In this document: in pieces, positions 7,256-21,587 of the stretch
Layout: each line of letters begins with the position of its first letter
Position numbering within the stretch: the first letter of the stretch is position 1
Virus record (IMG/VR): IMGVR_UViG_3300046516_001816
Span: 62,001 to 126,000 of that record
Length of the DNA: 64,000 bases
Direction: 5' to 3' (one strand)
Notes under the pieces: model-generated
Told to the model about the DNA's origin: nothing
Databases searched by the model: none
The model's input: the letters and a program-made list of their open reading frames with translations, nothing else
Position numbers and translations under genes: made by a program

Positions 7256-7329
7256 CTATCTGACACTAATACGAGAGTGTAGTGTTCGCGCGATCATTAA
7301 CTCTGTTTAAAACTGAAGGAAACGAAATC

Positions 7330-9297
7330 ATGGGCATCAACTCCCCGGAAAACAATCAAGCACAAACGTCGATGGGTCAGGCACTCGGGCGCGCCCAGGA
7401 ACAGGCCGCCGGTTCGAATGCTGGCACGACCCAGCAACAGACGTTTAACCAGCCGCGTGGTCAAGCGGGTCAGGCTCGTCCGCGTCTGGCAGACTTCGGC
7501 CGTGTTTCGCGTGCGGCGTTCAGCCGTAACCCGCAGAGCGACGTCATCACGAAGCTCAGCAACGCGCTCACCGAAATCTACAAGAACGGCGCGCAGATCG
7601 ACAAGTCGTTCGACGTGACGCTGATCCCGATCGACTACAACAACACGCGTACGCTGGTGAAGTCGTGTATCGTCGTCGCGGTTCGCGATCTGCAAAACCC
7701 GGACAACGGCGTCGCGTACCACACGCTCGTGCTGGAAGGCTCGAGCGAGCCGATCCAGAACGACTTCCAGATGATCGGTAACACGAACATCGAAATCACG
7801 AAGGTGACGGGCGACGTGTGGACGCCGGTGTTCCAGGGCGAAGTGCAGGAATGGGTGCAACGCGCATTCCCGGGCAAGAACCTGCTGCCGGTCGACGCAG
7901 AAGTCGTGTACAGCAACTTCGACGTCGAAAACCACAACCGCGTGCATCAGCTCGCGATGAACGCACTGGCCGCTTGCGCGACCGAGCTCGACATCCGTGC
8001 GGGTGGCGTGGACATCGACCTGGGTGCAGTGGACCAGGACAACACGCTGACCGTGCAAATGTCGTTCAACAACGCGCAGACGGAAGACGTCGCAGGCATG
8101 CCGCTGCGTTCGGACATCGTGATCGACTTCCGCGCAGGCGGCCAGCCGATCCCGAATCAGCCGGGCTCCAACACCCGTGTGTCGACGCTGTCGCGCATCT
8201 CGGGCTTCATGGATCTGGTCTGGATGCCGGCGCAGCCGCAGCAGCAAGCGTTCAATCCGTGGGTCGCGCAACAGCAAGTCGCGCCGTCGCCGGACGAGTT
8301 CAAGCGCTACATCCCGCGTTTCGTGATGACCGATCTCGAATCGCAAACGCTGCTCACCACGCGTGCTGAACTCCTGGCACTCGTGACGGCGTTCACGCTG
8401 CGTGAAAACAACGCGTGGGTCGAGTCGTTCCGTCCGTCGCCGGTGCAGGTCGAAGGCGTGGACTGGAAGGACATCGGCGCCGTGGGTATCGAGGCGAACT
8501 TCGATCGCAACCCCAACGGCTTCGGCTCGCGGATCGACACGAAGAGCGACCAGTTCCAACGCGGTCAGAACTCGGCAGCCGACTACCTGATGCGTCTCGT
8601 CGCATCGGTGTTCCAGCCGAAGCTGATGCTGTCGCTCGACATCCCCGAGTGCGGTCCGCAAACGTGGTTCACGTCGGTGTTCGCCGCAGCTGGCGAAACG
8701 CAGAACGCGAACAGCGCGCATGCGACGGAGTTCATCATCAAGGAAGCGGACAAGCTCACGCATGGTCGTTTCCTGAAGCACTTCCCGGCAAACGCGCGCG
8801 TCACGGTCGATGAAAACAACCGCATCTTCAAGGGCTACTGGATCGACCGCAACGGTCACATGCGCAGCCTCGACGAGATCGATTACCTGGCCGTGCTCAA
8901 CATGGTCGGCGATCGCGATCCGGAACTGGCACGCGAATGGTCGGACAGCTTCGCGCTCACGGGCGTGCCGCTCGAGATCCGTCTGGACAAGCGCCGTAAG
9001 ATCATCAACGGCATCCTTGGCCAGAACAACGTGCACATCAAGGGCTTCGCACGCCGTGTCACCTTCGAGCCGGCATTCGTCGACGCGTTGGTCGCAGCAT
9101 GCAAGGAAGTGGGCCTCACGATGCGCACGATCGCACCGTACGCAGAGCTGAACACGTACGAGCGTGGCGTGAATCCGTACGCCGCACAAGCAGCGCTGGA
9201 CGCATCGGGCTACACGTCCGGTCTGTTCAACCGCGGCTTCGCGGGCTCCAACCAGGGCCAGTTCGGCAACCGCGCAGGCTTCTCGCGCTGGGGTTAA
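7330..9297 (+). CDS. chmA: Chimallin, major phage-nucleus shell protein (phiKZ gp54/PhuN-like)
   Basis: 655 aa with disordered Q/G-rich N-terminus and aromatic/Gly C-tail (FGNRAGFSRWG); extreme high-expression codon bias; immediately upstream of nvRNAP beta-prime-N as in all chimalliviruses; ATG at 7330 after SD GAAGGA. Confidence 0.85.
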   Translation: MGINSPENNQAQTSMGQALGRAQEQAAGSNAGTTQQQTFNQPRGQAGQARPRLADFGRVSRAAFSRNPQSDVITKLSNALTEIYKNGAQIDKSFDVTLIPIDYNNTRTLVKSCIVVAVRDLQNPDNGVAYHTLVLEGSSEPIQNDFQMIGNTNIEITKVTGDVWTPVFQGEVQEWVQRAFPGKNLLPVDAEVVYSNFDVENHNRVHQLAMNALAACATELDIRAGGVDIDLGAVDQDNTLTVQMSFNNAQTEDVAGMPLRSDIVIDFRAGGQPIPNQPGSNTRVSTLSRISGFMDLVWMPAQPQQQAFNPWVAQQQVAPSPDEFKRYIPRFVMTDLESQTLLTTRAELLALVTAFTLRENNAWVESFRPSPVQVEGVDWKDIGAVGIEANFDRNPNGFGSRIDTKSDQFQRGQNSAADYLMRLVASVFQPKLMLSLDIPECGPQTWFTSVFAAAGETQNANSAHATEFIIKEADKLTHGRFLKHFPANARVTVDENNRIFKGYWIDRNGHMRSLDEIDYLAVLNMVGDRDPELAREWSDSFALTGVPLEIRLDKRRKIINGILGQNNVHIKGFARRVTFEPAFVDALVAACKEVGLTMRTIAPYAELNTYERGVNPYAAQAALDASGYTSGLFNRGFAGSNQGQFGNRAGFSRWG

Positions 9298-9512: not shown

Positions 9513-11048
9513 ATGGGCATTCACATGGAGATCATCAGCCATGATCAGATCTTCGACCAGTATCTCTCCAAAGAGCCAATCATCATCAACGATCTGTCCG
9601 ACATTTCCGAGACGGATCGGGAACGTAACGATCGCCTCATTTTCACGAAGTACGACCTGATTAACTCCGATCTGCTGTCGAACATCCCCTCGTGCGATTG
9701 CGGTAATACGATTGGCGCCGATAAACTGGGCAATGGGAAGGACATCCCGCCCGTGGAGTGTCCGGACTGTCACAAGCCGGTGAAAGAGCTGCATCAGCAA
9801 GACCTCGAGCCCCTGATCTGGTTGCGTGCGCCCATGGGCGTGAAAGCGCTGATCAACCCGATCATCTGGACCATGCTCGCGGGCAAGAACGGGTTCGAGA
9901 AATCGAACTTCGATGTGGTACGCTGGATCTGCGATACGTCGTATAAACCGCAGGCGGTCAAAGAGCCGCCCGTGGTGGACTACATTCGTAAGGCCGGGAT
10001 TCCGCGCGGCTACAACAACTTCGTCGAGAACTTCGACGAGATCATGGACTTCATGTTTAACCTGAAGTTCTACAGCAAGAAGAAGTTGGCCCCCTTGAAG
10101 CAGCTGATCAAGGAGTATCGGCATGCGGTCTTTAGCACGCATTTGCCGCTACCCAACCGCTCCTTGCTGGTGCTGGAAGAAACGAACCACGGCACCTACG
10201 TGGACCCGACTGCACCGATTGCAGTGAATGCGATTCGCATGATGGTGGGCATCGATGGGCCGCTGTCGGTCCATACGCCGCGGGTGAAGGAAAACCGCAC
10301 GATCAAGATGATCATCGAGACGGCGAACTTCTACGACGAGAACAGTCGCACCGTGCTCGCCAAGAAGGAAGGCATCTTCCGTAAGCATATCTTCGGCACC
10401 CGGTCGCACTTCAGCTTCCGCGCCGTGATTTCTTCGCTCACGGATAACCATCGCTACGACGAAATCCACATCCCGTGGGGCATCGGGGTGGCGGTGTTCG
10501 AGCTGCATTTGCAGAACATGCTCAGGCGCCGCGGCTACACTCCGTCGCAAGCCAATGCGTTCTTGGCTGAACATACGCAGAAGTACCATCCGATGTTGGA
10601 TGAGATGTTCAACCTGATCATCAGTCGTTCGCCCATTGGTGGCGGCGTGCCGTGCGTGCTGCAACGTAATCCGTCGCTCGCGCGTTCATCTGCTCAAGCC
10701 ATGTTTATCACGAAGGTGAAGACCGACGTGAACATCCCGACGATCAGTATGTCGATTTTGTCGGTGGTGGGCTTCAATGCGGACTTCGACGGCGATCAGC
10801 TGAACTGCACGTTGTCGCTCGATCACGTGACGGCCAACGATCTGTACCGCCTGGCACCCCACCAGTCGGCTTTCGATCTGAACGCCCCGCGTACCATCTC
10901 GCGCAACCTCTCGAAACCGAAGACGGCGATTGCCACCTTCTCGAACTGGCTGCACTGGGACCAACCTGAGACGCCGGACCCGGCGATCCTGCAACGGATG
11001 AATATGATTCCGGAGTGTGATCCGTACGTGGCCCCGACGATTCATTAA
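9513..11048 (+). CDS. Non-virion RNA polymerase beta-prime N-terminal subunit (phiKZ gp55-like)
   Basis: Zn-binding CDCG...CPDC, catalytic NADFDGD, LQRNPSL motif. Confidence 0.92.
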   Translation: MGIHMEIISHDQIFDQYLSKEPIIINDLSDISETDRERNDRLIFTKYDLINSDLLSNIPSCDCGNTIGADKLGNGKDIPPVECPDCHKPVKELHQQDLEPLIWLRAPMGVKALINPIIWTMLAGKNGFEKSNFDVVRWICDTSYKPQAVKEPPVVDYIRKAGIPRGYNNFVENFDEIMDFMFNLKFYSKKKLAPLKQLIKEYRHAVFSTHLPLPNRSLLVLEETNHGTYVDPTAPIAVNAIRMMVGIDGPLSVHTPRVKENRTIKMIIETANFYDENSRTVLAKKEGIFRKHIFGTRSHFSFRAVISSLTDNHRYDEIHIPWGIGVAVFELHLQNMLRRRGYTPSQANAFLAEHTQKYHPMLDEMFNLIISRSPIGGGVPCVLQRNPSLARSSAQAMFITKVKTDVNIPTISMSILSVVGFNADFDGDQLNCTLSLDHVTANDLYRLAPHQSAFDLNAPRTISRNLSKPKTAIATFSNWLHWDQPETPDPAILQRMNMIPECDPYVAPTIH

Positions 11049-12479: not shown

Positions 12480-13099
12480 ACGAAGCAGAACAAACCGTAT
12501 ACGAAGACCGCGACGCTCCTCAAGGTCAACGCCGCCTGGATGCCCCGAGCCCGGGTTGGCTCGACTCGGCCATGCGCCGGATCAATGATTCGATTCTTCA
12601 GGTGATCATGCACGAGCAGCATGAGTACCTCGAGAACAAACGCCTGCCGCATACGCTCAAGCAAAGCGATGCGCTGGTGAAGCCGTACCTGCTTAAAGAC
12701 GGACAGGTCATCGTCGCGACCGTGTTTCCGGTGGCGAGCGAACACAACTACGTGTGCTGCTTCACGCCGATCTACGACCGCGGCTACAGCATCTTCGACA
12801 ACGCCAAGATTCCCGAAGACGTCGCCGTGCTGGGCTACAATCTGTTCGTCTACAAGGAAAACGGCCCGCTCGCGGTGAACAACCAGCCGATCCAGATGGC
12901 CGATTATGTGCAGGAAGAACTCTGCCGGATTGCGCGTGAGATGAAGCTGCGCTACAGCCAGTTCGTCTATTTCACGTTGCTCACCCCGCGGGTGGCGGAC
13001 GGCTTTGAAGACCCCCACAACAACTTGGCGAATCTTATTCCGCGGACCCATACTGTGGAAGAGAAGGCTGCCCCGGCTCAGCCGACGCCGATCGACTAA
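12476..13099 (+). CDS. Hypothetical protein
   Basis: 207 aa, ATGA coupling. Confidence 0.7.
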   Translation: MNEAEQTVYEDRDAPQGQRRLDAPSPGWLDSAMRRINDSILQVIMHEQHEYLENKRLPHTLKQSDALVKPYLLKDGQVIVATVFPVASEHNYVCCFTPIYDRGYSIFDNAKIPEDVAVLGYNLFVYKENGPLAVNNQPIQMADYVQEELCRIAREMKLRYSQFVYFTLLTPRVADGFEDPHNNLANLIPRTHTVEEKAAPAQPTPID

Positions 13100-13111
13100 G
13101 GAAGACTGAAC

Positions 13112-13741
13112 ATGTTGAGAAGAGGACACGATTGGCGCGCCGCTCATCAGCGCGCGACTCATGGTCGTGACGAAGGCAAAGCGGATTATATTTTGCAGTG
13201 CGCCAGTGCGCTCAGCCAAGTCGCCAATGAAGACGTGGCCCGCTTGCCGGAAGACATCTTTGTGAAGGTGTTCTTGCCGCTGTTTGCCGGCGAAACGCTC
13301 GAGTTCCCCAAGGAAGCAACGATCGCCGGCTGGATCAGCATCGCGGGTTCGCCCTACAAGGAAGTCGACGTCTTCAACAAAGAAACGGGTGCGACCGTGT
13401 TCCGCTGCCCCCCATTGTTTGATTACAATGGTGTGGACCCGGTTCGCAATCTGAAGGATCGTACGCAGCGTCCCATCGCCGATATTGTGCAGATGGCCGA
13501 CAAGCTGATGAACATCCATCCGAACCAAAGCATCGCGTTTCTGCAACGGGAGTTGGGCCAACGGGCCAACAAGATGAACACCGGTGCAAAGCTTATGCCG
13601 AACCTGATCCGCTGGAACGAAGTGTTTGCGCGCTACGGCCGCAAGCCTTTGGTCGAGGGGCTGCCAGGCGGCACGAGCTCTGCTGACCCTCAGCAAGCCC
13701 AATCGGGCCCTGAGCCCGACGCGGAATATGAAGACTTCTAA
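13112..13741 (+). CDS. Conserved hypothetical protein
   Basis: 209 aa, SD AAGGAAG. Confidence 0.72.
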   Translation: MLRRGHDWRAAHQRATHGRDEGKADYILQCASALSQVANEDVARLPEDIFVKVFLPLFAGETLEFPKEATIAGWISIAGSPYKEVDVFNKETGATVFRCPPLFDYNGVDPVRNLKDRTQRPIADIVQMADKLMNIHPNQSIAFLQRELGQRANKMNTGAKLMPNLIRWNEVFARYGRKPLVEGLPGGTSSADPQQAQSGPEPDAEYEDF

Positions 13742-14849
13742 ACTTAAGCTGGCGAGTGCGAGTGATATCCACCTCGGTGGAAAACGCACGGACACGCGCC
13801 ACATCATCAAGAACTTACGCGCGGCCTTCCCGGATAACGAGGAGACCGCGCAGTTGGACCTCATCTGCTTGGCGGGTGATGTGTTCGACACCTTGTTGAA
13901 CCTGAATGACAATGATTTGATGGAGATCGATCTCTGGGTCGGCTACATGCTGAGGTTGTGTGTCAAGTATGACATCATCCTCTACGTGTTGGAAGGCACA
14001 CCGTCTCACGACTGGTGGCAATCCGCCCGGTTCCTCACCATCAATGAAGTTGCAGGCATTGGCGCTAAACTCCGCTACGTTAAAGACATTTCCGTTGAGT
14101 ACGAACCTGACCTAGACATCTGGGTTGGGTTCGTACCTGACGAAAGTGCCCCGACAACCGACCAAACACTCAGCCAATTCAAAGCCCTGCTCGAAGCCAA
14201 AGGGCAAGATAAAGTCGATGTAATGTTCATGCACGGGCAATTTGAGTATCAATTACCCCCGGTGGTGAAAGCCCCCAAGCATTCCAGTGTCGAGTATTTG
14301 GCCCTGGTGCGATACATTATCTCGATTGGTCATGTGCACGTCTACTCGTCCTACGAGCGGATCTACGCACAGGGTTCGTTTGACCGGCTCAGTCACGGGG
14401 AGGAAGATCCCAAGGGGCATATTCGGGCGACGCTGTATAACACGCCCGACTATGACTACGAAGTGGTGTTTGTGGAAAACGAAGGCGCCAAGAAGTTTGT
14501 CACGGTCTACGTGGGCGACATGCCCGTGGATGACGCACTGATCGTGATTGAGCGCAAGGTGCGGGAACTGCCGTTTGATTCGTCGGTACGGATCGAAGCG
14601 GCGAAGGATCACCCCCTGTTCTCGGACATGGAGTCCTTGATCCGGATGTATCCGATGTTCACGTGGGCGAAAAAGCCCATCGACAAGGAAGAAGAAGAAA
14701 ACGAGCTGGAAGATGATGAAACGGTGTTCGTGCCGATTACCATCAACCGGGACAATATCACGAAGCTCCTCTTGGAACGCCTAGCGTCCCGGGGGCTTCC
14801 TGCGGACATCTTGGCGATCGCGGAGGCAAAGATCAATGAGGTGAAATGA
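13728..14849 (+). CDS. SbcD/Mre11-like metallophosphoesterase nuclease
   Basis: Motifs SDIHLG, GDVFD, GTPSHD, MHG, GHVH; start moved to ATG 13728. Confidence 0.88.
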   Translation: MKTSKLKLASASDIHLGGKRTDTRHIIKNLRAAFPDNEETAQLDLICLAGDVFDTLLNLNDNDLMEIDLWVGYMLRLCVKYDIILYVLEGTPSHDWWQSARFLTINEVAGIGAKLRYVKDISVEYEPDLDIWVGFVPDESAPTTDQTLSQFKALLEAKGQDKVDVMFMHGQFEYQLPPVVKAPKHSSVEYLALVRYIISIGHVHVYSSYERIYAQGSFDRLSHGEEDPKGHIRATLYNTPDYDYEVVFVENEGAKKFVTVYVGDMPVDDALIVIERKVRELPFDSSVRIEAAKDHPLFSDMESLIRMYPMFTWAKKPIDKEEEENELEDDETVFVPITINRDNITKLLLERLASRGLPADILAIAEAKINEVK

Positions 14850-15739
14850 TGTTTACGCAGGCGATCTTCAGTGAAGGAACAGATATAATGTTTAAAGAAG
14901 GCATTGCCGAGCGTGCTGTCGGCCAATACCCGCTCTCGATCCCAACGAGCTTGGCAATTGAAAGCGCGAATGGGATCCATCCTGAGATCCCTGTGGAGAC
15001 GCCTCCGATCCTGAAGTTCGACGAACTCTGGATTAATCTGCGCACGCTGCACCGCAACTTTATCGGCTCGCTCGATAAGCTGACCGCAGAGCTGATCGAC
15101 GGCTACGAAGCAGCGGACGTGGTATCTGAGGAGATGGAGCACATCCAGTCCATCATCCAGGAAACCGCGCCCAATTGCCAGGTGCGCTTCTACGTGAGCA
15201 ACTACGCACGCATGGAGCAGACCTACCCGAAGGCCACGATCCGGCGCGATAACACCGTCAAGCAAAAGCATTTCACGCAGACGATGACCGCCTCGATTGC
15301 GAAGCTGCTCAAGGACCACGAGCATCAACCGTACCTGAGTGTTTTCGATCGCAAGCTGAAACACGTGGGGGAGGGCTTTCCGAAAGTCCTGATCGTCACG
15401 CATATCCCTTACGACCTGTTGTCCGCCAAAGCGTTTAAAGAACTCGTGTTGCTGGAATCCCACACGGGCTCGTTTAAGCGTCGGGCCTTGTGGTACACCA
15501 AGTTCTACAATGGCAAGGAACTGGTGCAGATTCCGTTTCGGGAAGACATGCTCCAGATCTTTGGCGACAATGAAACCTTCCACCCGATGGACATTCGTCT
15601 ACGCAAGGAGATCCTCGACATCGCGAATACTTACAACTGGTCTCAGGTCACCACCACCGACCGGATACGGCTCTCACTGGAAAACATGAAGAACCATTGG
15701 GCGCTGGAACAGATCAAACCCCTGCTGAAAAGCGAGTAA
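14846..15739 (+). CDS. Conserved chimallivirus protein
   Basis: 297 aa between the SbcD-like gene and ChmC-like gene. Confidence 0.75.
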   Translation: MMFTQAIFSEGTDIMFKEGIAERAVGQYPLSIPTSLAIESANGIHPEIPVETPPILKFDELWINLRTLHRNFIGSLDKLTAELIDGYEAADVVSEEMEHIQSIIQETAPNCQVRFYVSNYARMEQTYPKATIRRDNTVKQKHFTQTMTASIAKLLKDHEHQPYLSVFDRKLKHVGEGFPKVLIVTHIPYDLLSAKAFKELVLLESHTGSFKRRALWYTKFYNGKELVQIPFREDMLQIFGDNETFHPMDIRLRKEILDIANTYNWSQVTTTDRIRLSLENMKNHWALEQIKPLLKSE

Positions 15740-15836
15740 TAGGATAGGGGCAATTTTTACATCCCAGGCCTATTTTCTGCATAGCCCCAATTAAATTCAG
15801 AAAAGCTACAAACAGCCTGACAATTAAGGAAAAACC

Positions 15837-16643
15837 ATGAGCGATTTTCAACGTGCTCCGCGCAAAAAGAATGCACTGGACAACCGTAAGCTGCATCTGT
15901 CGGCGCCGTGCCCCACGGCCAAAGGCAAGTGGTCCAGCTTCCAAGTGAACGTGTTCACCGCGGAAAAGACCGGCGAACCGAACCCGCGTATCACGGTGTA
16001 CACGCGTGACCCGGAAGATCAGGGCGAGTCGAAGAACTACGGCAAGATCCAGGCCAACCTCGACCCGGTCGTGTTCATGGCGCTGATGGTCAAGCTGCGC
16101 TGGATCATCGAAGGGCGTCCGGGCACGGAAGCCGAGCCGATCAAGGCTGACGGCGAAGACAAGGTGAAGATGGAGAACAAGAACTTCATCTTCCCGGGTG
16201 GCCGCAAGTCGGAAGAACCGGTCGTCGTGTCGGAAATTCACCTCGGCAAGGACGCTGACGGCGTGATCTGGATCTCGGTCACGGCCAAGGATCGTCCGCG
16301 CATCAAGTTCACGTTCGGCCCGAACCAGTTCCACAACCTGTTCCACAAGACGGGTGAACAGTTCAGCAAGGGCGAAGCGTCGCAACTGTGGGCACTCGGC
16401 TGGTGTCGTCTGATGGAAGAGATGATTCCGGAGTTCCTGATCAGCGACTACGTGGACATCCCCTACGATCCGAACGCAGCCAAGGGCGGCGGTGGCGGTG
16501 GCTTCAATCGCGGCGGTGGTGGCGGTGGCGGTTACAACCGCGGTGGCGGCGGTGGTGGCGGCGGCGGTGATCGTCCGTACAACAAGGGCAACATGTCGGG
16601 CACGAACGACACGGCCACGAGTGACGACGACATCCCCTGGTAA
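15837..16643 (+). CDS. chmC: ChmC-like nucleus-associated RNA/ssDNA-binding protein (phiKZ gp67-like)
   Basis: Directly upstream of the gp68/PicA pair; beta-rich N-domain plus Gly/Arg-rich disordered tail ending DDDIPW; high-expression codons. Confidence 0.7.
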   Translation: MSDFQRAPRKKNALDNRKLHLSAPCPTAKGKWSSFQVNVFTAEKTGEPNPRITVYTRDPEDQGESKNYGKIQANLDPVVFMALMVKLRWIIEGRPGTEAEPIKADGEDKVKMENKNFIFPGGRKSEEPVVVSEIHLGKDADGVIWISVTAKDRPRIKFTFGPNQFHNLFHKTGEQFSKGEASQLWALGWCRLMEEMIPEFLISDYVDIPYDPNAAKGGGGGGFNRGGGGGGGYNRGGGGGGGGGDRPYNKGNMSGTNDTATSDDDIPW

Positions 16644-16680
16644 GCCGTGTAGTAACATAACGACATAGCAGGTACGGGGT

Positions 16681-16712
16681 AGCCGGGTGCGTGGGGTTCT
16701 TCGCATCCGGCT
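16681..16712 (+). terminator. Hairpin/terminator after ChmC-like gene
   Basis: AGCCGGGTGCG/CGCATCCGGCT stem; weak U tract. Confidence 0.55.
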
Positions 16713-16748
16713 CGTAGGACCAATAACGAATCCAAACCAAACACAGTT

Positions 16749-16757
16749 ATATATCAT
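16749..16757 (+). promoter_or_regulatory. Putative early promoter core ATATATCAT
   Basis: ACAGTT-ATATATCAT upstream of the gp68-like gene. Confidence 0.55.
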
Positions 16758-16850
16758 CTCCTAGAGTAGTATCCCCGATCTATTTAGGAGCTGATGTGTA
16801 ATGACCAAGGAAGCAGCACTGATGTACGTTCCTTTTAGGAGGCCGGTAAA

Positions 16851-18419
16851 TTGGAACTGCAAATAAGCAAGATTAGTCTATCCGAGACAAGCCGTTCGGA
16901 AGTGAGTATTCTCCATCGTGGTCAGCAGCTCGACTTCAATGTCTCTGACTACAAAGGGATCATGCGTGATCTCAAGCATGACATCTTCGGCGAAATCAAC
17001 GCCTTCTGGTCCTGGCTACCGTTGCCAGAGCAAGACGCCATCTTTGCGGCTTACCGCGACATCAAAAACGTTTTTCAGGAATACCCCAGCAATGAGCAAC
17101 TGATGCTTCGGTTGTTCGGGCTGGTCGCGAAGCTGGTCAACCTGCACCAGCTCGACAAGATCAAGCACTGGATGGATTTTCACGAGAAGATCTATTACCC
17201 GCCGGATCTGAAGCAAGTGTTCATTCAGCATGAAATGCCGGGCACGGCAGAAGGCACGTACCTCTTCGAGGACTATGCGTGGCTCGTCGGCCTGTCGATC
17301 GTGCTGCGGCCGATGTTTCCGGTGTGGGGCGAATTTATCGCCTACATCAAAGAAGACTTCGGCCCGAACTGGAAAGAGTATTACGCGTTCCAGTTGTTGT
17401 CCCAGTCGTATCTGGCGCACTCGATTCCGATGGAGCGTCTGCGGGTGTATGTGAAATCGATGGTGGCCAGCGAAAAGAAGGTGGACGTGGCCAATTCGGC
17501 GCACATCTTGCATGGCGGCGTGTCGGTGGAAGATTACCCGGAATGGGTGATTGGGCTGGTGTTGGTGCGCAAGCTGATCATCGGGGACGTGAAGGGCATG
17601 GATCCGAAGGCGCATTTGGCCAGCCAGATCTTTAACTTCATCAAGTACAAGACCAAGCCGCGCAGCGATAACGGCTTCTCGGGCATTGTGCGTGAAAAGC
17701 GCCTGGAAGGTCAGGGGCAGGGTGACGAGAATCAGCAGTCGAAGCTCGAAGCCAACAAGGTGAAAGCCCCGGTGTCAGAAGGCCGGATTGCCCCGATCCT
17801 GTACTACGCGCGCGATATGCGTCACGTGGCTTTGCAGATCTGTCCGGATCTTCCGCTCGATATGCTGGAGCAGTCGTTCGAGTCGATCATGCATCGGGGG
17901 TTTGAGATTCATCACAAGCACCAGGCCGTGCTCTTGATGTATATCTTGAAGTACCGCAGCCAGATCAGTCCGCGCTCGATTCACCACTTCATCTTCAATG
18001 CCAAGCGCGAAGCCATGGCAGCTGCGCAAGCCATCTATTGGCATAAGGGCTACTACGAACTGGCGGGTCTCGTCAGTGCCGTGGCACGGCCCAATATCGA
18101 TGAGCATACGGCAGCCGAAGGCGGTCCTCGCCAACGCCTGTCGCAAGCGACCATCGAAGAACTGACGAAGTGGTTCCCCCACCCGCGTCGTCAGGGCGGT
18201 AAACAAAAAGCACAGCGGCTGCCGACCTCGGCCGAAGTGTCCATCGAATTGGTCGATAAAGGGTTGTCGGAACACGCGTGGGTGCTCACTCTTCCCCAGG
18301 AGTGGGTCGGGATTCTGAAACAGAACCCCGGTACCAACGATCGTAGCTATGGTGTACCCGGCAACCTCAAAGTAAAACTCGCGCAACTCGCAATTGCGTT
18401 TGCCTCAAGGAGCTTCTAA
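16851..18419 (+). CDS. nvRNAP promoter-specificity (sigma-like) subunit, phiKZ gp68-like
   Basis: 522 aa, TTG start with SD AGGAGG; size and position match gp68. Confidence 0.75.
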   Translation: MELQISKISLSETSRSEVSILHRGQQLDFNVSDYKGIMRDLKHDIFGEINAFWSWLPLPEQDAIFAAYRDIKNVFQEYPSNEQLMLRLFGLVAKLVNLHQLDKIKHWMDFHEKIYYPPDLKQVFIQHEMPGTAEGTYLFEDYAWLVGLSIVLRPMFPVWGEFIAYIKEDFGPNWKEYYAFQLLSQSYLAHSIPMERLRVYVKSMVASEKKVDVANSAHILHGGVSVEDYPEWVIGLVLVRKLIIGDVKGMDPKAHLASQIFNFIKYKTKPRSDNGFSGIVREKRLEGQGQGDENQQSKLEANKVKAPVSEGRIAPILYYARDMRHVALQICPDLPLDMLEQSFESIMHRGFEIHHKHQAVLLMYILKYRSQISPRSIHHFIFNAKREAMAAAQAIYWHKGYYELAGLVSAVARPNIDEHTAAEGGPRQRLSQATIEELTKWFPHPRRQGGKQKAQRLPTSAEVSIELVDKGLSEHAWVLTLPQEWVGILKQNPGTNDRSYGVPGNLKVKLAQLAIAFASRSF

Positions 18420-18421
18420 TA

Positions 18422-19951
18422 ATGTTCGCACAAGCCACCACCCGTATTGGTATCAAGCGTCTGGTTCTGATGGAAACCGGCCGTTACGACACGCAGTTCC
18501 GGCGCCCGTATCAGTATCAAGCCACGGGCCATGCCATCAATGCGCTCACCGAAGCCGTCGGCGGGGCCCAGAAGTTCACCGCGAGTCAGCTCGCGGGGGT
18601 TGCTAACCAGATCGTCGCGCCGTCGGCGCAAGCCGAATCCACCATTCAGATCGGTGGCGTGTCGTGGAATGAACGCCGACTGCGCTTCATGATGGAAGTC
18701 GAGTGCAAGCAGCTGGCCGGCGGCTCGATCATGGTGACGGTGTTGGGTTATACCGACTACCCCGGCGTGATCGTGCATTCGGCCGCGATCGATCCGAACA
18801 TGACGTTCTATATCAACTCGATTGTGAGCGTGCGTCGGACCATCGAAACCACCCCGCTGGGTGCGCAAACGTATTCGAATATCGTCGACAATTCGCACGT
18901 GCTCGTCGATCCGAATTACGGGGGCGTGCACCAGATGAATCCCGCGCACAAAATGCGTCCGGAAGACGTCTATGCGACGATGTCGATGTCGCATCTGGGC
19001 GGGCTCTCTAATGCCGTGGATCTGCGTACCGTGCTCGATCATCAACCGATCGCCTCGAAGCGCAGCAACTCGGTGGCGGCCAGCTACGCCGCGGACATGC
19101 TGAGCGGCTTTACGCGCGCAGCCGTGGATGCGAACTTCGGCATGAACAAGCCGGAAGACATCTTCGAGAATGCCCGTGGCTATACGCAGGAATCGATGCT
19201 CACGATGAATCCGTTCTTCAAGGCGATCACCACCTTCCGTGATGGTTTCGTGTCGAACTTCTTCTCGTGGCGCGATCTGCAAGCGCTCGACCCGAACGTG
19301 GATAACGTGACGGTGGTGACGATGCTGGGCCAAACGCAGATGACCGCGTCGAGCCAACTCACCGCATACGACTGCACGATGGGTGGTGCTGCGCCCTGGG
19401 GTGCCTCGGATCGTCAGACGATGGTCGCGACGATTCTGTCGCAATCGATTCCGTCGTTGATGGCGGACTTCGGTCTCACGGTGGTCGCGTTTGCGACGAC
19501 CAATCGGCGGGTGTTTGCCGATGCGATCAATGCTGCGGGGCCGTTCTCGATGCAAAGCCGGATCTCGACGCGTATTGCCGACATCCAAAGCTTCGCGGAA
19601 TTCGACATGGCGCCGTATATGGATCACTTCGTCGCGAAGTTGGAGAAACTCGTCTTTACCGACGTGTCCTTCAATAACGAAACGGACTTCTATATCGAGA
19701 TGCGGGCCGACATCCTGGGTGAAACCTGGATCAAGCTCTCGCTCGACGGCGGCATGGAGTACACGTTTGTGACGCCAAGCTTTGCCGACGCGCTGATGGC
19801 CCCGGTTGTGACGACCAACAATCAGCTGCACTCGGAACTCTCCTCGGGAATGGAGGCGGTCCTGCATCACGTGGCCGATCACTCGGGCATGGGTTTCTCG
19901 GTCAACAACGGCACTCAGGCAGCACCGGCAAATCTGTTCGGTGTCATCTAA
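18422..19951 (+). CDS. picA: PicA/Imp1 nuclear protein-import factor (phiKZ gp69-like)
   Basis: 509 aa immediately after the gp68-like gene; assigned by synteny and size. Confidence 0.68.
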   Translation: MFAQATTRIGIKRLVLMETGRYDTQFRRPYQYQATGHAINALTEAVGGAQKFTASQLAGVANQIVAPSAQAESTIQIGGVSWNERRLRFMMEVECKQLAGGSIMVTVLGYTDYPGVIVHSAAIDPNMTFYINSIVSVRRTIETTPLGAQTYSNIVDNSHVLVDPNYGGVHQMNPAHKMRPEDVYATMSMSHLGGLSNAVDLRTVLDHQPIASKRSNSVAASYAADMLSGFTRAAVDANFGMNKPEDIFENARGYTQESMLTMNPFFKAITTFRDGFVSNFFSWRDLQALDPNVDNVTVVTMLGQTQMTASSQLTAYDCTMGGAAPWGASDRQTMVATILSQSIPSLMADFGLTVVAFATTNRRVFADAINAAGPFSMQSRISTRIADIQSFAEFDMAPYMDHFVAKLEKLVFTDVSFNNETDFYIEMRADILGETWIKLSLDGGMEYTFVTPSFADALMAPVVTTNNQLHSELSSGMEAVLHHVADHSGMGFSVNNGTQAAPANLFGVI

Positions 19952-19997
19952 CAATTAAAACAAGGCGGGCTGTGAGACAATTGCAGCCTGAACAAAT

Positions 19998-21587
19998 ATG
20001 GCAATGACTTTGCTCGAGTTGTATAAGAGCATGATGGACACCGCGGGCATGATCGTCACGGAAGACCATCTGGTGTCCGGCGTGGTGCGCACGAAGGAAG
20101 ATGGTAAGCTGCACACCAACATCATGCCGGTGACGATCAAGGGCAAGCGGCTCGCGCTGCCGGCCCAGTCGATCCTGTCGATTCCGGACAAGAGCGGCAT
20201 CGTCGTGTTTCATCCGCTGATGGAACCGGTCGGGCGGGGTGAATCGGAAATCCTCGAGAAGTATCGCAACGCGTTGATGTATCGCCTCAATGACGTGGCG
20301 GCTTCGCAACTCGTGGAACTGACGGTCATCACCGGTGACGTGAACGGGCAATCGACGATGACCCCGGATCAGACGGAATTCCTGATGAAGGTGAAGGGCG
20401 TCGATGACGAGTTTCTCAAGAAGCTCGGCAAGATCCTCAACCAGATGCCGCACGATCAGACCGCGCGCCGTATCGTCACGTTCTTCCTGAAGAAGACCGG
20501 CACGGTCAACGACAAGCGCTACAAGCGTGTGGGCGTGGTGACGTTCCCGCTGTATGAGGAACTGCACAAACCCCCGACGGTCACGGTGATTCCGGCGACC
20601 AAGAAGGGCGAGAAGGACACGAAGAAGACGGAGTACGACGTCTACGGCGTGAAGTGTCGCGTGAAGGATCGCGAACTCCTGATCGCGCTGCTCGAGTATA
20701 TGTTCCCGAACATCGCGGTGCCGGGCGCATACAACAAGGGCAGTGATTCGGATATTGCGGCGAATCTGGATGCCCTGATGCACGCAGCGTTGGGCGTGAT
20801 TGAAGCGCTCAATTCGGTCACGGAAATCTTCGAAGACCGGATCCCGAAGGAAGAGGATCTGTTCATCAACGCGGACTGGAAAGAGACGTTCTTCAATCTG
20901 GACGTGATGCTGAACGCGATTCGCATGGTGCCGATGCAAGCGGGCAATGAAGGCACCACTGCCGACGAACCCGCCGGTCATCAGAAGGTTCAAGCACCCG
21001 TGCCGCACGCGGGACTGCATGTACCGACTCCGCCTGCCTATGCGCCGCCGCCGATTGTTACGGCACCCACGGCACCCACGGCACCGGTGCATCAGCCCAC
21101 CAACGCACCGGTTCAAGCTGCGCCGTCCGCATCTGCGAGCAATGGCACGGCACTCGATAGCTTTTTGGCGCAACGCGAGCAAGAACGTGCGCGTCAGCAG
21201 CAACTCGAACAGGGCTGGAAAGCCGTGACGCATATGGGGTCCGCACCGGTTCCGTCGGTTCAGCCTCCGTACAATCCGGCAGCAGCTTTCATGCCGCCGG
21301 GCGCACAAGGCTATTATCCGCAAGCGCCGATGATGCCGGTGGCGCAACCCGTGCATACGGGTCGTGGGTTGGACTTCGGTAGTGTGCTCGCGACCAATCC
21401 GGCCGTGCTGTACGCGTCGGGCGGTCCGCAAGTGGGGATGATGCAAGGTCAGCCCCAGCCGCAAACGTCACGCTACTTCTCCCAGTTCACGGGGCAGCAG
21501 CCGATGATGCAGCAACCCATGCAACAGCCCATGCAGCAACCGGGCTATTACCCGCAGCAACCGATGGGCTATCAACGCACCATCTAA
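19998..21587 (+). CDS. Conserved chimallivirus protein (phiKZ gp70-like) with P/Q/M-rich disordered C-terminus
   Basis: 529 aa after PicA; C-terminal ~200 aa low complexity. Confidence 0.7.
   Translation: MAMTLLELYKSMMDTAGMIVTEDHLVSGVVRTKEDGKLHTNIMPVTIKGKRLALPAQSILSIPDKSGIVVFHPLMEPVGRGESEILEKYRNALMYRLNDVAASQLVELTVITGDVNGQSTMTPDQTEFLMKVKGVDDEFLKKLGKILNQMPHDQTARRIVTFFLKKTGTVNDKRYKRVGVVTFPLYEELHKPPTVTVIPATKKGEKDTKKTEYDVYGVKCRVKDRELLIALLEYMFPNIAVPGAYNKGSDSDIAANLDALMHAALGVIEALNSVTEIFEDRIPKEEDLFINADWKETFFNLDVMLNAIRMVPMQAGNEGTTADEPAGHQKVQAPVPHAGLHVPTPPAYAPPPIVTAPTAPTAPVHQPTNAPVQAAPSASASNGTALDSFLAQREQERARQQQLEQGWKAVTHMGSAPVPSVQPPYNPAAAFMPPGAQGYYPQAPMMPVAQPVHTGRGLDFGSVLATNPAVLYASGGPQVGMMQGQPQPQTSRYFSQFTGQQPMMQQPMQQPMQQPGYYPQQPMGYQRTI

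What the first reader, a model, noticed from the sequence alone, without database searches (positions are those of the whole stretch)
16482..16643. ChmC-like protein ends in an RGG condensate tail plus an SSB-tip mimic DDDIPW
Seen: KGGGGGGFNRGGGGGGGYNRGGGGGGGGGDRPYNKG followed by SDDDIPW-stop. Established: bacterial SSB ends in DDDIPF, which docks genome-maintenance enzymes (RecQ, ExoI, RNase HI, Pol III chi, PriA); ChmC is an RNA-binding, phase-separating protein. Inference: this protein may recruit or sequester host SSB-interacting proteins or phage partners at the nucleus, or double as the phage SSB.
Basis: partly seen in the sequence, partly recalled or inferred. Interest (0 to 1): 0.62.

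Follow-up and report, generated by a model that had tools for sequence, protein, structure and literature searches.

The report
Jumbo-phage ChmC carries SSB-like tail
This is the ChmC/Imp6 nucleic-acid-binding protein of a nucleus-forming jumbo phage, and its floppy glycine-rich tail ends in an acidic, aromatic tip almost identical to the docking peptide of bacterial SSB. Nearly the whole protein family shares this tip and nobody seems to have reported it, which suggests a simple experiment on how the protein recruits partners.

Summary

The protein is a true orthologue of ChmC/Imp6 (PhiKZ gp67, PhiPA3 gp61, Goslar gp176):
- It matches them by sequence.
- It sits in the conserved order SbcD / FEN-like / ChmC / gp68 / PicA, near chmA.
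- Its core is predicted to have a Whirly fold.

The genome is a 285-kb chimallivirus, probably of Burkholderiaceae.

The main new result is that the tip is not peculiar to this phage. Of 125 family members, 108 end in [ILMV]-P-[FW], with Asp at -4 in 101 of those. Fourteen end in DDDIPF, the E. coli SSB tip. The tip is far better conserved than the linker, and RGG is not conserved at all (absent from 53 of 125 tails).

ChmC is therefore laid out like a bacterial SSB on a different fold: a nucleic-acid-binding core (a tetramer in PhiPA3), a disordered Gly/Asn linker and an acidic docking tip. None of the six chimallivirus genomes searched has an OB-fold SSB.

The papers I could search call this region only an "S/D/E-rich" cluster, and published truncations removed linker and tip together. 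What the tip binds is untested. I favour phage partners over host mimicry, because the tips of PhiKZ and Goslar are degenerate. The gene is a known kind; the tip motif is a testable new lead.

The parts
15837..16643 (+). chmC/imp6 orthologue, 268 aa plus stop
   Evidence: ORF. phrog_3284, E 2.5e-47. tblastn hits on PHIKZ067, PhiPA3 061 and Goslar_00176. BLASTP against PhiPA3 gp61, E 8e-22.
15837..16475 (+). Whirly/PUR-like nucleic-acid-binding core (residues 1-213)
   Evidence: AF2 pLDDT is above 90 over most of residues 9-212. VIA-align best matches: StWhy2 Z 9.1, PBF-2 Z 8.7, MRP1/2 Z 6.7, Pur-alpha Z 6.4. Foldseek's best matches are PURA and WHY2.
16476..16622 (+). Disordered Gly-rich linker (residues 214-262), 44% Gly over the whole tail
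   Evidence: pLDDT below 50 for residues 220-267. Composition.
16503..16517 (+). FNRGG aromatic-Asn-Arg-Gly-Gly motif 1
   Evidence: N224 is invariant among five reference ChmCs.
16533..16547 (+). YNRGG motif 2
   Evidence: N234 is invariant among five reference ChmCs.
16623..16640 (+). Acidic C-terminal tip D-D-D-I-P-W (SSB-Ct-like), followed by the TAA stop at 16641-16643
   Evidence: Family-wide conservation.
16681..16712 (+). Stable hairpin about 40 nt after the stop; no U tract
   Evidence: RNA fold of 16644-16760 gives -34.7 kcal/mol, z -2.36. The simple terminator scan does not call it.
13728..14849 (+). SbcD/Mre11-like nuclease. The ORF is open from 13626; the likely ATG is at 13728.
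   Evidence: phrog_100, E 7e-50; Metallophos, E 0.002.
14846..15739 (+). Homologue of PhiKZ gp66 / Goslar gp177 (T4 RNase H/FEN-like according to the Rhc preprint)
   Evidence: phrog_3229, E 1e-82. BLASTP against the Goslar gp177 C-terminus, E 3e-23. Annotation taken from 10.64898/2026.10.01.755736.
16851..18419 (+). [quoted passage not shown]
   Evidence: phrog_3209, E 5e-101. Synteny with PHIKZ068 and PhiPA3 062.
18422..19951 (+). PicA/Imp1-like nuclear import factor (PhiKZ gp69 position)
   Evidence: phrog_3141, E 1e-82. Synteny. PhiKZ gp69 binds gp67 directly.
7282..9297 (+). ChmA, the major nuclear shell protein; marks the genome as a chimallivirus
   Evidence: phrog_4795 'nuclear shell protein', E 5.9e-95.

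Best explanation
The ORF is the ChmC/Imp6 orthologue of a roughly 285-kb nucleus-forming jumbo phage (chimallivirus), probably of a Burkholderiaceae host.

It is laid out like a bacterial SSB but on a different fold:
- a Whirly-fold core that binds single-stranded nucleic acid (published for PhiPA3 as a homotetramer binding ssRNA better than ssDNA);
- a Gly-rich disordered linker of about 48 residues;
- a short acidic tip ending Ile-Pro-Trp-COOH.

The tip is a short linear motif shared by the whole family.

My best reading is that the tip works the way the SSB C-terminal tip does. It would be a tethered docking peptide whose terminal aromatic residue and carboxylate sit in a basic/hydrophobic pocket. 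That would bring partner proteins to ChmC-coated RNA or ssDNA. It would also touch the basic nucleic-acid face of neighbouring tetramers, which together with the linker would drive condensates.

I expect the partners to be mainly phage-encoded proteins at or in the phage nucleus. [quoted passage not shown]

Shown here: identity, fold, disorder, and conservation of the tip. Inferred: that the tip docks proteins, and onto which ones.
For: Orthology and context.

Fold and disorder: Whirly core and a tail with pLDDT below 50.

Tip conservation:
- 108 of 125 members end in [ILMV]-P-[FW], with Asp at -4 in 101 of the 108; 14 end DDDIPF and 11 DDDIPW.
- Information content is 2.1-4.3 bits per position in the last six residues against about 1 bit in the linker.
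- Cultured phages: Proteus phage 10 ends DFDDDIPF, RAY DDLPF, 2050HW DNDIPW, RP12 DDIPW, FLC9 EDLPF.
- Distant IMG/VR relatives keep an acidic run plus a hydrophobic C-terminus: DDLAL, DDLGL, EDLTF.
- Position-specific conservation of Pro and of the terminal aromatic residue at the very C-terminus is what a pocket-docking peptide predicts, not a plain charge cluster.

SSBs of a related host have the same layout (Gly-run linker...MDDDIPF).

Only ChmC carries such a tip in this genome, so it is not a general import tag.

Literature:
- Deleting linker and tip together abolishes condensates and shell localisation in PhiPA3, and fails to rescue titre in Goslar (PMC11077065).
- PhiKZ gp67 binds Imp1 directly (10.1101/2024.03.27.586873).
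- Goslar ChmC co-purifies with Rhc, DNA polymerase and the non-virion RNA polymerase.
- In E. coli SSB the linker drives phase separation, and the tip binds both partner proteins and the OB fold (PMC7584906).
Against: - No binding was measured or predicted here. The one complex prediction gave no answer.
- AF2 does not dock the tail onto the protein's own core; the tail is simply low-confidence.
- The tip varies in the experimentally studied phages: PhiKZ ...MPSF and PhiPA3 ...IPNF have an extra residue before the terminal Phe, Goslar ends ...GLAF, and Vibrio pir03 ends ...DDGWE. So either the pocket co-evolves or the motif is looser than SSB-Ct.
- The published AF2 screen of PhiKZ Rhc against all PhiKZ proteins did not flag gp67.
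- The Imp1-gp67 complex was obtained with FLAG-tagged gp67. If that tag was C-terminal, a free C-terminus is not needed for that contact. The preprint text is ambiguous on this.
Confidence: 0.55

Rival explanations
1. ChmC is the missing single-stranded-DNA-binding protein of chimalliviruses, in addition to binding mRNA. It would coat ssDNA at forks and recombination intermediates inside the phage nucleus, and its tip would organise the phage replisome as the SSB, T4 gp32 and T7 gp2.5 tails do. This overlaps with the best explanation and is not exclusive of it.
For: - No PF00436 SSB in this CheckV-complete genome, nor in PhiKZ, PhiPA3, Goslar, RSF1 or RAY; the positive control matched in 10 bacteria.
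- No Enc34/gp2.5-like hit.
- The best structural matches are StWhy2 and PBF-2, plant ssDNA-binding Whirly tetramers.
- PhiPA3 ChmC binds ssDNA with Kd 184 nM, was found by proximity labelling with the recombinase UvsX, is among the most abundant early proteins, and its knockdown gives small nuclei.
- Goslar ChmC co-purifies with Rhc and both DNA polymerase subunits.
- The gene lies next to the SbcD-like and FEN-like genes.
- According to the Imp preprint, TopA is the only host protein known inside the phage nucleus, so host SSB is probably not available there.
Against: - PhiPA3 ChmC prefers ssRNA (Kd 58 nM), and eCLIP finds it on phage mRNAs.
- The published knockdown phenotypes are explained by an mRNA export defect, and replication was not separated from that.
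- A very divergent OB-fold SSB detectable only by structure could still be present.
- The gp32 search had no working positive control.
Confidence: 0.3
2. The tip mimics host SSB. It would bind the SSB-Ct pockets of host enzymes such as ExoI, RecQ, PriA, Pol III chi, RNase HI and Topo III, either to sequester them away from phage nucleic acids or to recruit them.
For: - Many tips are identical to the bacterial consensus: 14 end DDDIPF, and Proteus phage 10 ends DFDDDIPF.
- The SSBs of a related host end ...MDDDIPF after a Gly-run linker, much like this tail.
- PhiPA3 GFP-ChmC is partly cytoplasmic, and the native protein is very abundant. A tetramer carries four tips.
Against: - Phages of hosts with canonical SSB tips have degenerate tips: PhiKZ MPSF, PhiPA3 IPNF, PS119XW IPDF, Goslar GLAF, Noxifer DFVM.
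- In E. coli SSB the Pro and the terminal Phe are critical (established knowledge).
- This clade ends in Trp while the SSBs of a related host end in Phe.
- The terminal residue class changes at least 15 times on the family tree, as expected if the pocket co-evolves rather than being fixed by the host.
- No host SSB partner has been reported in ChmC pull-downs.
Confidence: 0.15
3. The acidic end is only an 'electronegative cluster'. It would keep the basic RNA-binding protein soluble and damp non-specific binding, with no specific docking (the published reading).
For: - Mean net charge of the last 12 residues is -3.4 across the family, against about +1 for the linker.
- Enustun et al. describe an S/D/E-rich subregion and cite electronegative clusters.
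Against: - A charge cluster does not need an invariant Pro at -2, an aliphatic residue at -3 and an aromatic residue as the very last position.
- It also does not need to sit exactly at the C-terminus. A composition-driven tract would drift in register, as the linker does.
Confidence: 0.12
4. The resemblance is a chance product of a low-complexity tail, or the ORF is not a real gene.
For: The region is GC-rich, and a 347-aa antisense ORF overlaps it.
Against: - 121 homologues, with E-values down to 1e-157.
- A confident fold.
- Conserved synteny.
- A family-wide tip.
- A unique occurrence in the genome.
Confidence: 0.01

Closest known systems
ChmC / Imp6 of chimalliviruses (PhiPA3 gp61, PhiKZ gp67, Goslar gp176, 201phi2-1 gp123)
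   Same: - Homologous sequence.
- Same gene neighbourhood.
- Whirly-fold core.
- Disordered Gly/Asn-rich C-terminal region followed by an acidic end.
- Encoded by a ChmA-bearing jumbo phage.
   Different: - Only about 30-33% identical to the studied proteins.
- The linker is much richer in Gly (44%).
- The tip is the canonical D-D-D-I-P-aromatic form, without the extra residue seen in PhiKZ and PhiPA3 (MPSF, IPNF) or the divergent Goslar end (GLAF).
- It ends in Trp.
Bacterial SSB (E. coli SSB; Caballeronia SSBs in L008/L009)
   Same: - Same three-part layout: a core that binds single-stranded nucleic acid (a tetramer in PhiPA3 ChmC), a disordered Gly-rich linker of variable sequence, and a conserved acidic tip D-D-D-I-P-aromatic at the exact C-terminus.
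- Both phase-separate through the tail (PMC7584906; PMC11077065).
- SSBs of a related host end ...MDDDIPF after Gly runs.
   Different: - The core is a Whirly fold, not an OB fold, and has no PF00436 match.
- The published preference is for RNA over ssDNA.
- Trp replaces Phe at the end.
- No partner of the tip is known.
- There is no DNA-level sign that the tail was recently copied from a host ssb gene; only GGC-run matches were found.
Plant organellar Whirly proteins (StWhy2 3n1h, PBF-2/p24 1l3a) and T. brucei MRP1/MRP2, Pur-alpha
   Same: These are the best structural matches to the core: Z 9.1, 8.7, 6.7 and 6.4 over 130-144 residues. All are binders of single-stranded DNA or RNA, and the Whirly proteins are tetramers.
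   Different: - No sequence-profile match to Pfam Whirly.
- The studied ChmC has beta-beta-beta-alpha repeats rather than beta4-alpha.
- The long Gly-rich linker and SSB-like tip are specific to ChmC.
Acidic C-terminal tails of phage SSBs (T7 gp2.5, T4 gp32)
   Same: From established knowledge: these are phage-encoded single-strand binders whose acidic C-terminal tails dock phage replication proteins and also fold back on the protein's own DNA-binding surface. The terminal Phe of gp2.5 is essential. T4 RNase H (a FEN) works with gp32, and here a FEN-like gene sits next to chmC.
   Different: - Unrelated folds.
- Those tails do not match the bacterial D-D-D-I-P-F consensus.
- No gp32-like or gp2.5-like gene is detectable in this genome.

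Membership tests
ChmC / Imp6 (Chimallin C) | Sequence homology to PhiPA3 gp61, PhiKZ gp67 and Goslar gp176 | tested here: met
   tblastn places the hits on PHIKZ067, PhiPA3 061 and Goslar_00176. BLASTP against gp61 gives E 8e-22. phrog_3284, E 2.5e-47.
ChmC / Imp6 (Chimallin C) | Conserved core gene block of a ChmA-encoding phage (SbcD / gp66 / ChmC / gp68 / PicA, near chmA and the non-virion RNA polymerase genes) | tested here: met
   Window gene order. The same order holds in the 26 IMG/VR loci wherever the flanking DNA is present and in cultured phages.
ChmC / Imp6 (Chimallin C) | Whirly/PUR-like fold of the core | tested here: met
   AF2 mean pLDDT 83.7, with the core above 90. StWhy2 Z 9.1, PBF-2 Z 8.7, MRP1/2 Z 6.7, Pur-alpha Z 6.4; the next, unrelated rows score 5.3 or less.
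ChmC / Imp6 (Chimallin C) | Disordered C-terminal 50-70 residues: a Gly/Asn-rich part followed by an acidic part | tested here: met
   pLDDT below 50 for residues 220-267. Composition and charge.
ChmC / Imp6 (Chimallin C) | Homotetramer | not tested
   Published for PhiPA3.
ChmC / Imp6 (Chimallin C) | Binds ssRNA/ssDNA, forms condensates, binds Imp1/PicA | not testable with these tools
   Of the six basic residues mutated in PhiPA3, three (K30, R44, K59) align with K31, R51 and K70 here; the other three do not align with basic residues.
Bacterial SSB (PF00436) | OB-fold ssDNA-binding domain | tested here: not met
   No Pfam hit. The fold is Whirly.
Bacterial SSB (PF00436) | Intrinsically disordered linker after the binding domain | tested here: met
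Bacterial SSB (PF00436) | Conserved acidic C-terminal tip D-D-D-[IL]-P-F at the exact C-terminus | tested here: met
   The tip here is DDDIPW (Trp for Phe). 14 relatives end in DDDIPF itself. SSBs of a related host end ...MDDDIPF.
Bacterial SSB (PF00436) | The tip binds SSB-interacting proteins | not testable with these tools
   The only complex prediction gave no answer.
RGG/RG-box RNA-binding proteins | Clusters of closely spaced RGG repeats (di- or tri-RGG with short spacers; definition recalled from the literature) | tested here: not met
   There are two RGG, 7 residues apart. 53 of 125 relatives have none in the tail.
Plant-type Whirly (PF08536) | Match to the Whirly sequence profile | tested here: not met
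   No hit for the protein or anywhere in the genome. The similarity is in fold only.

The most novel reading that the evidence does not exclude
ChmC is the chimallivirus substitute for SSB. It would be a Whirly-fold tetramer that kept or acquired the whole SSB tail logic: a linker that drives phase separation and a D-D-D-I-P-aromatic hub peptide. Through that tip it would organise replication, R-loop removal, transcription and the PicA import complex on single-stranded DNA and nascent RNA inside the phage nucleus. This would tie together its separately reported roles as RNA binder, condensate former and Imp1 partner.
Probability: 0.3. Interest if true: 0.8.

Novelty: new member of a known kind. 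Interest (0 to 1): 0.55.

Why it matters
[quoted passage not shown] Its mechanism is unsettled: it has been reported as an mRNA binder and export factor, a condensate former, and a direct partner of the import factor Imp1.

Published truncations removed the linker and the tip together. So every phenotype assigned to 'condensation' could instead come from losing a docking peptide.

Recognising that the last six residues are a conserved SSB-type tip gives a cheap, sharp experiment: delete the tip or mutate single residues in it, and run peptide pull-downs.

It also raises a concrete answer to an unasked question. These phages replicate in a compartment where TopA is the only host protein known to be present, yet none of the six genomes searched has a recognisable SSB.

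If the tip binds host SSB partners instead, it would be a new kind of phage interference with host genome-maintenance enzymes.

Tried and rejected
- **Complex prediction**, Rhc-like RNase HI domain (L006:1138-1869) with ChmC residues 225-268: score 0.00, verdict 'no answer'. This is not evidence either way. In hindsight PicA/Imp1, a published direct binder that I found only later, would have been the better pair; the cap was one job.
- **phmmer of the tail against PDB sequences:** only a Gly-rich stretch of GTPBP10, E 0.18, which is spurious.
- **blastn of the tail DNA against the ssb loci of a related host:** only GGC-run low-complexity matches, so no sign of recent capture.
- **Megablast of 13000-20000 against phage genomes:** no near relative.
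- **Foldseek against the PDB:** only weak hits (best E 1.4e-3), though coherent (PURA, WHY2). The Whirly assignment rests on VIA-align.
- **Sigma-70 promoter scan around the gene:** nothing, as expected for a phage with its own RNA polymerases.
- **gp32 profile search:** no hits, but its control matched nothing, so it is uninformative.
- **Covariation between tip type and PicA, gp68 or FEN residues:** not attempted. Only about 20 distinct paired loci were in hand, and tip type follows phylogeny.
- **A general nuclear-import tag:** rejected, because no other ORF in the genome carries such a tip.
- **Not used or not seen:** no reads tools, no alternative genetic code, nothing human-like, no broken toxin gene.
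Full report
**1. Observation**

The window holds a 268-aa ORF on the + strand at 15837-16643. It has a Gly-rich stretch with FNRGG and YNRGG, then DRPYNKG, a short Ser/Thr/Asn stretch, and DDDIPW followed by a stop. A 347-aa antisense ORF overlaps the gene. I take it for a by-product of the GC-rich sequence.

**2. What the gene is**

- Pfam finds nothing. PHROGs places the protein in phrog_3284, of unknown function, with E 2.5e-47 over its full length.
- tblastn against 50,697 phage records finds 130 jumbo phages of Pseudomonas, Erwinia, Ralstonia, Serratia, Burkholderia, Xanthomonas and other hosts. The best is Burkholderia phage FLC9, at 46% identity.
- The hits fall on PHIKZ067, PhiPA3 gene 061 and Goslar_00176. 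These are the proteins named ChmC by Enustun et al. (PMC11077065) and Imp6 in the Imp preprint (10.1101/2024.03.27.586873). BLASTP against PhiPA3 gp61 gives E 8e-22.
- The window carries the conserved chimallivirus core block. Its genes, in order:
  - DNA polymerase (386-2629);
  - ChmA shell protein (7282-9297; phrog_4795, E 5.9e-95);
  - a non-virion RNA polymerase subunit (9513-11048);
  - SbcD-like nuclease;
  - the gp66/gp177 FEN-like gene;
  - ChmC;
  - the gp68-like gene;
  - the PicA/Imp1-like gene;
  - more RNA polymerase subunits and a helicase.
- The order SbcD / gp66 / ChmC / gp68 / PicA / gp70 holds in 26 IMG/VR loci, down to about 25% identity.
- The genome is a 284,983-bp IMG/VR record that CheckV rates complete, and the window is 62001-126000 of it.
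- A relative with 63% identity lies on a 143.7-kb contig of the Caballeronia arationis LMG 29324 assembly. Another is labelled Paraburkholderia. A Burkholderiaceae host is therefore likely.

**3. Fold**

- AlphaFold2 with a 120-sequence alignment gives mean pLDDT 83.7. Most of residues 9-212 are above 90, and residues 220-267 are below 50.
- An exhaustive structural comparison puts StWhy2 (Z 9.1), PBF-2 (Z 8.7), T. brucei MRP1/2 (Z 6.7) and Pur-alpha (Z 6.4) on top, ahead of unrelated rows at 5.3 or less.
- Foldseek's weak best hits are also PURA and WHY2.

So the core is Whirly/PUR-like, as published for PhiPA3 ChmC, and the tail is disordered.

**4. The tip is family-wide**

This is the main result.

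- A word-index search returned 121 relatives. Together with the window protein, FLC9 and three reference phages (125 sequences), 108 end in [ILMV]-P-[FW].
- Within those 108, Pro at -2 is invariant and Asp is at -4 in 101. Position -3 is Ile in 68 and Leu in 33. The last residue is Phe in 85 and Trp in 23.
- Fourteen end in DDDIPF and eleven in DDDIPW.
- Information content is about 1 bit per position in the linker and 2.1-4.3 bits in the last six positions.
- D265 and P267 are among only 27 columns that are at least 90% conserved in the whole alignment.
- Cultured phages show the same pattern:
  - Proteus phage 10 ends DFDDDIPF, identical to the last eight residues of E. coli SSB;
  - RAY ends ADDLPF, 2050HW DNDIPW, RP12 SDDIPW, FLC9 SEDLPF and LucasX DDDIPM.
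- The experimentally studied proteins have looser versions:
  - PhiKZ ends FDEDMPSF, PhiPA3 FDDEIPNF, PS119XW FDDSIPDF and Goslar AFDGLAF.
- Very distant IMG/VR relatives keep an acidic run and a hydrophobic end: DDLAL, DDLGL, EDLTF.
- On a tree built from the core only, the class of the last residue (Phe, Trp or other) changes at least 15 times.
- In the whole genome only ChmC has such a tip.
- RGG, by contrast, is not conserved: 53 of 125 tails have none.

**5. Comparison with SSB**

- The Caballeronia assembly encodes SSBs whose tails are runs of Gly with a few Arg, Pro, Ser and Ala, ending in ...FDEMDDDIPF and ...FADMDDDIPF. The layout is very like the ChmC tail, except that they end in Phe rather than Trp.
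- Harami et al. (PMC7584906) describe bacterial SSB as follows:
  - an OB-fold tetramer;
  - a disordered linker of non-conserved sequence that drives phase separation;
  - a conserved nine-residue C-terminal peptide that binds at least 18 partner proteins and also the OB fold.
- ChmC reproduces this three-part plan on a Whirly core. PhiPA3 ChmC is a homotetramer. It binds ssRNA with Kd 58 nM and ssDNA with Kd 184 nM, and it needs its C-terminal region for condensates.
- I found no DNA-level trace of recent capture from a host ssb gene. Whether the tail is homologous to SSB tails or convergent remains open.

**6. Is this known?**

- Enustun et al. describe an N/G-rich subregion followed by an S/D/E-rich 'electronegative cluster'. 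Their text does not contain the word SSB.
- Searches for ChmC with SSB, and for DDDIPF with jumbo, found no relevant paper.
- Two recent reviews and the Imp preprint do not mention SSB.

Within the library I could search, the SSB-like tip of ChmC is unreported. The library misses most subscription journals, including the final Nature version of the Imp study.

**7. Function**

Published facts that bear on the tip:

- PhiPA3 ChmC lacking residues 204-251 (linker plus tip) loses condensates and shell localisation but still forms tetramers and binds RNA. The Goslar truncation supports nucleus growth but does not rescue titre.
- PhiKZ gp67 forms a SEC-stable complex of about 120 kDa with Imp1/PicA.
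- A PhiPA3 ChmC pull-down recovers ChmB, the gp68-type RNA polymerase subunit and a virion RNA polymerase subunit. ChmC was also found by proximity labelling with UvsX.
- A Goslar Rhc pull-down recovers ChmC together with non-virion RNA polymerase subunits and both DNA polymerase subunits.
- chmC is essential in PhiKZ by TnSeq and scores strongly in the antisense screen.
- None of these experiments isolates the tip.

My best reading is that the tip is a docking peptide of the SSB-Ct type. It would serve mainly phage-encoded partners, and it would also make contacts in trans with the basic nucleic-acid face of other tetramers, which would help condensation. The reasons:

- The Pro and the terminal aromatic residue are conserved position by position at the exact C-terminus, which is not what a plain charge cluster needs.
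- The tip drifts in lineages whose hosts keep a canonical SSB tip, which fits a partner that co-evolves with it.

**8. The 'missing SSB' reading**

- No OB-fold SSB is detectable in this genome or in PhiKZ, PhiPA3, Goslar, RSF1 or RAY, while the control genomes gave hits.
- No Enc34/gp2.5-like protein is found. The gp32 search is uninformative.
- Replication takes place in a compartment where TopA is the only host protein known to be present.

An abundant, early, essential, ssDNA-capable tetramer with an SSB-type tail, encoded between nuclease and polymerase genes, is an obvious candidate for the phage's SSB. Against this stand its RNA preference and the eCLIP data. I give this reading about 0.3. 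It is compatible with the docking reading.

**9. Host mimicry**

This reading is attractive because so many tips are identical to the bacterial consensus and the protein is partly cytoplasmic. It is weakened by the degenerate tips of PhiKZ, PhiPA3 and Goslar, and by the Trp ending in this clade. I give it about 0.15.

**10. What failed**

- The single complex prediction (Rhc RNase HI domain with the tail) gave no answer.
- The tail finds nothing meaningful in PDB sequences.
- I did not attempt a covariation analysis, because there were too few paired loci.

**11. Verdict**

- The protein is a new member of the known ChmC/Imp6 family.
- The SSB-like tip is real, under selection, family-wide and apparently unreported.
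- Its function is inferred, not shown.
- The value of the finding is a precise, cheap experiment that could re-interpret the published truncation phenotypes and test whether ChmC is the SSB-type hub of the phage nucleus.

Noticed in passing
G000 (whole record), ends; L006:1138-1995: The last ~100-150 bases of the 284,983-bp record recur near its start, so the assembly is circular or terminally redundant. The Rhc-like RNase HI-clamp gene (GTG start, about 541 aa) runs across the record end.
   Followed up: partly
L007:3867-4517: In the related phage contig of the Caballeronia arationis assembly, an extra 216-aa ORF sits between chmC and the gp68-like gene. It has a weak NUMOD/I-HmuI-like hit (E 4e-4, below the cut-off), so it may be a homing-endonuclease insertion.
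   Followed up: partly
window 16681-16712: A stable GC-rich hairpin sits about 40 nt after the chmC stop (z -2.36 for the 117-nt stretch). It has no U tract and the simple terminator scan does not call it. It may be a phage-type terminator or an RNA stability element.
   Followed up: partly
P0052 (metagenomic relative): One relative has an internal ...MDDDIPF followed by a basic extension of about 25 residues. It is either a natural 'capped tip' variant or a missed stop or frameshift in the source contig.
   Followed up: no
L008, L009 (Caballeronia arationis SSB loci): The likely host lineage has at least two full SSB paralogues with Gly-run linkers ending ...MDDDIPF, plus further partial hits. 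The ChmC linker composition seems to track host SSB linker composition (Gly-rich here, Asn/Gly-rich in Pseudomonas phages). This was not tested systematically.
   Followed up: no
window 13626-14849 and 14846-15739: The SbcD-like nuclease and the FEN-like gp66/gp177 homologue overlap by 4 bases and lie directly upstream of chmC in nearly every locus examined. chmC thus sits at the boundary between a DNA-metabolism pair and the RNA polymerase/import genes.
   Followed up: partly
window 15714-16757 (- strand): A 347-aa antisense ORF covers the whole chmC gene. It is very Arg/Val/Ala-rich, typical of the reverse strand of a GC-rich gene, and I take it for an artefact.
   Followed up: no
L017 (Vibrio phage pir03), L020 (Noxifer), L005 (Goslar): A few cultured chimalliviruses have tips that depart strongly from the consensus...EDDGWE...DFDDFVM and ...FDGLAF. 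These are natural variants that could be used to map what the tip needs.
   Followed up: no
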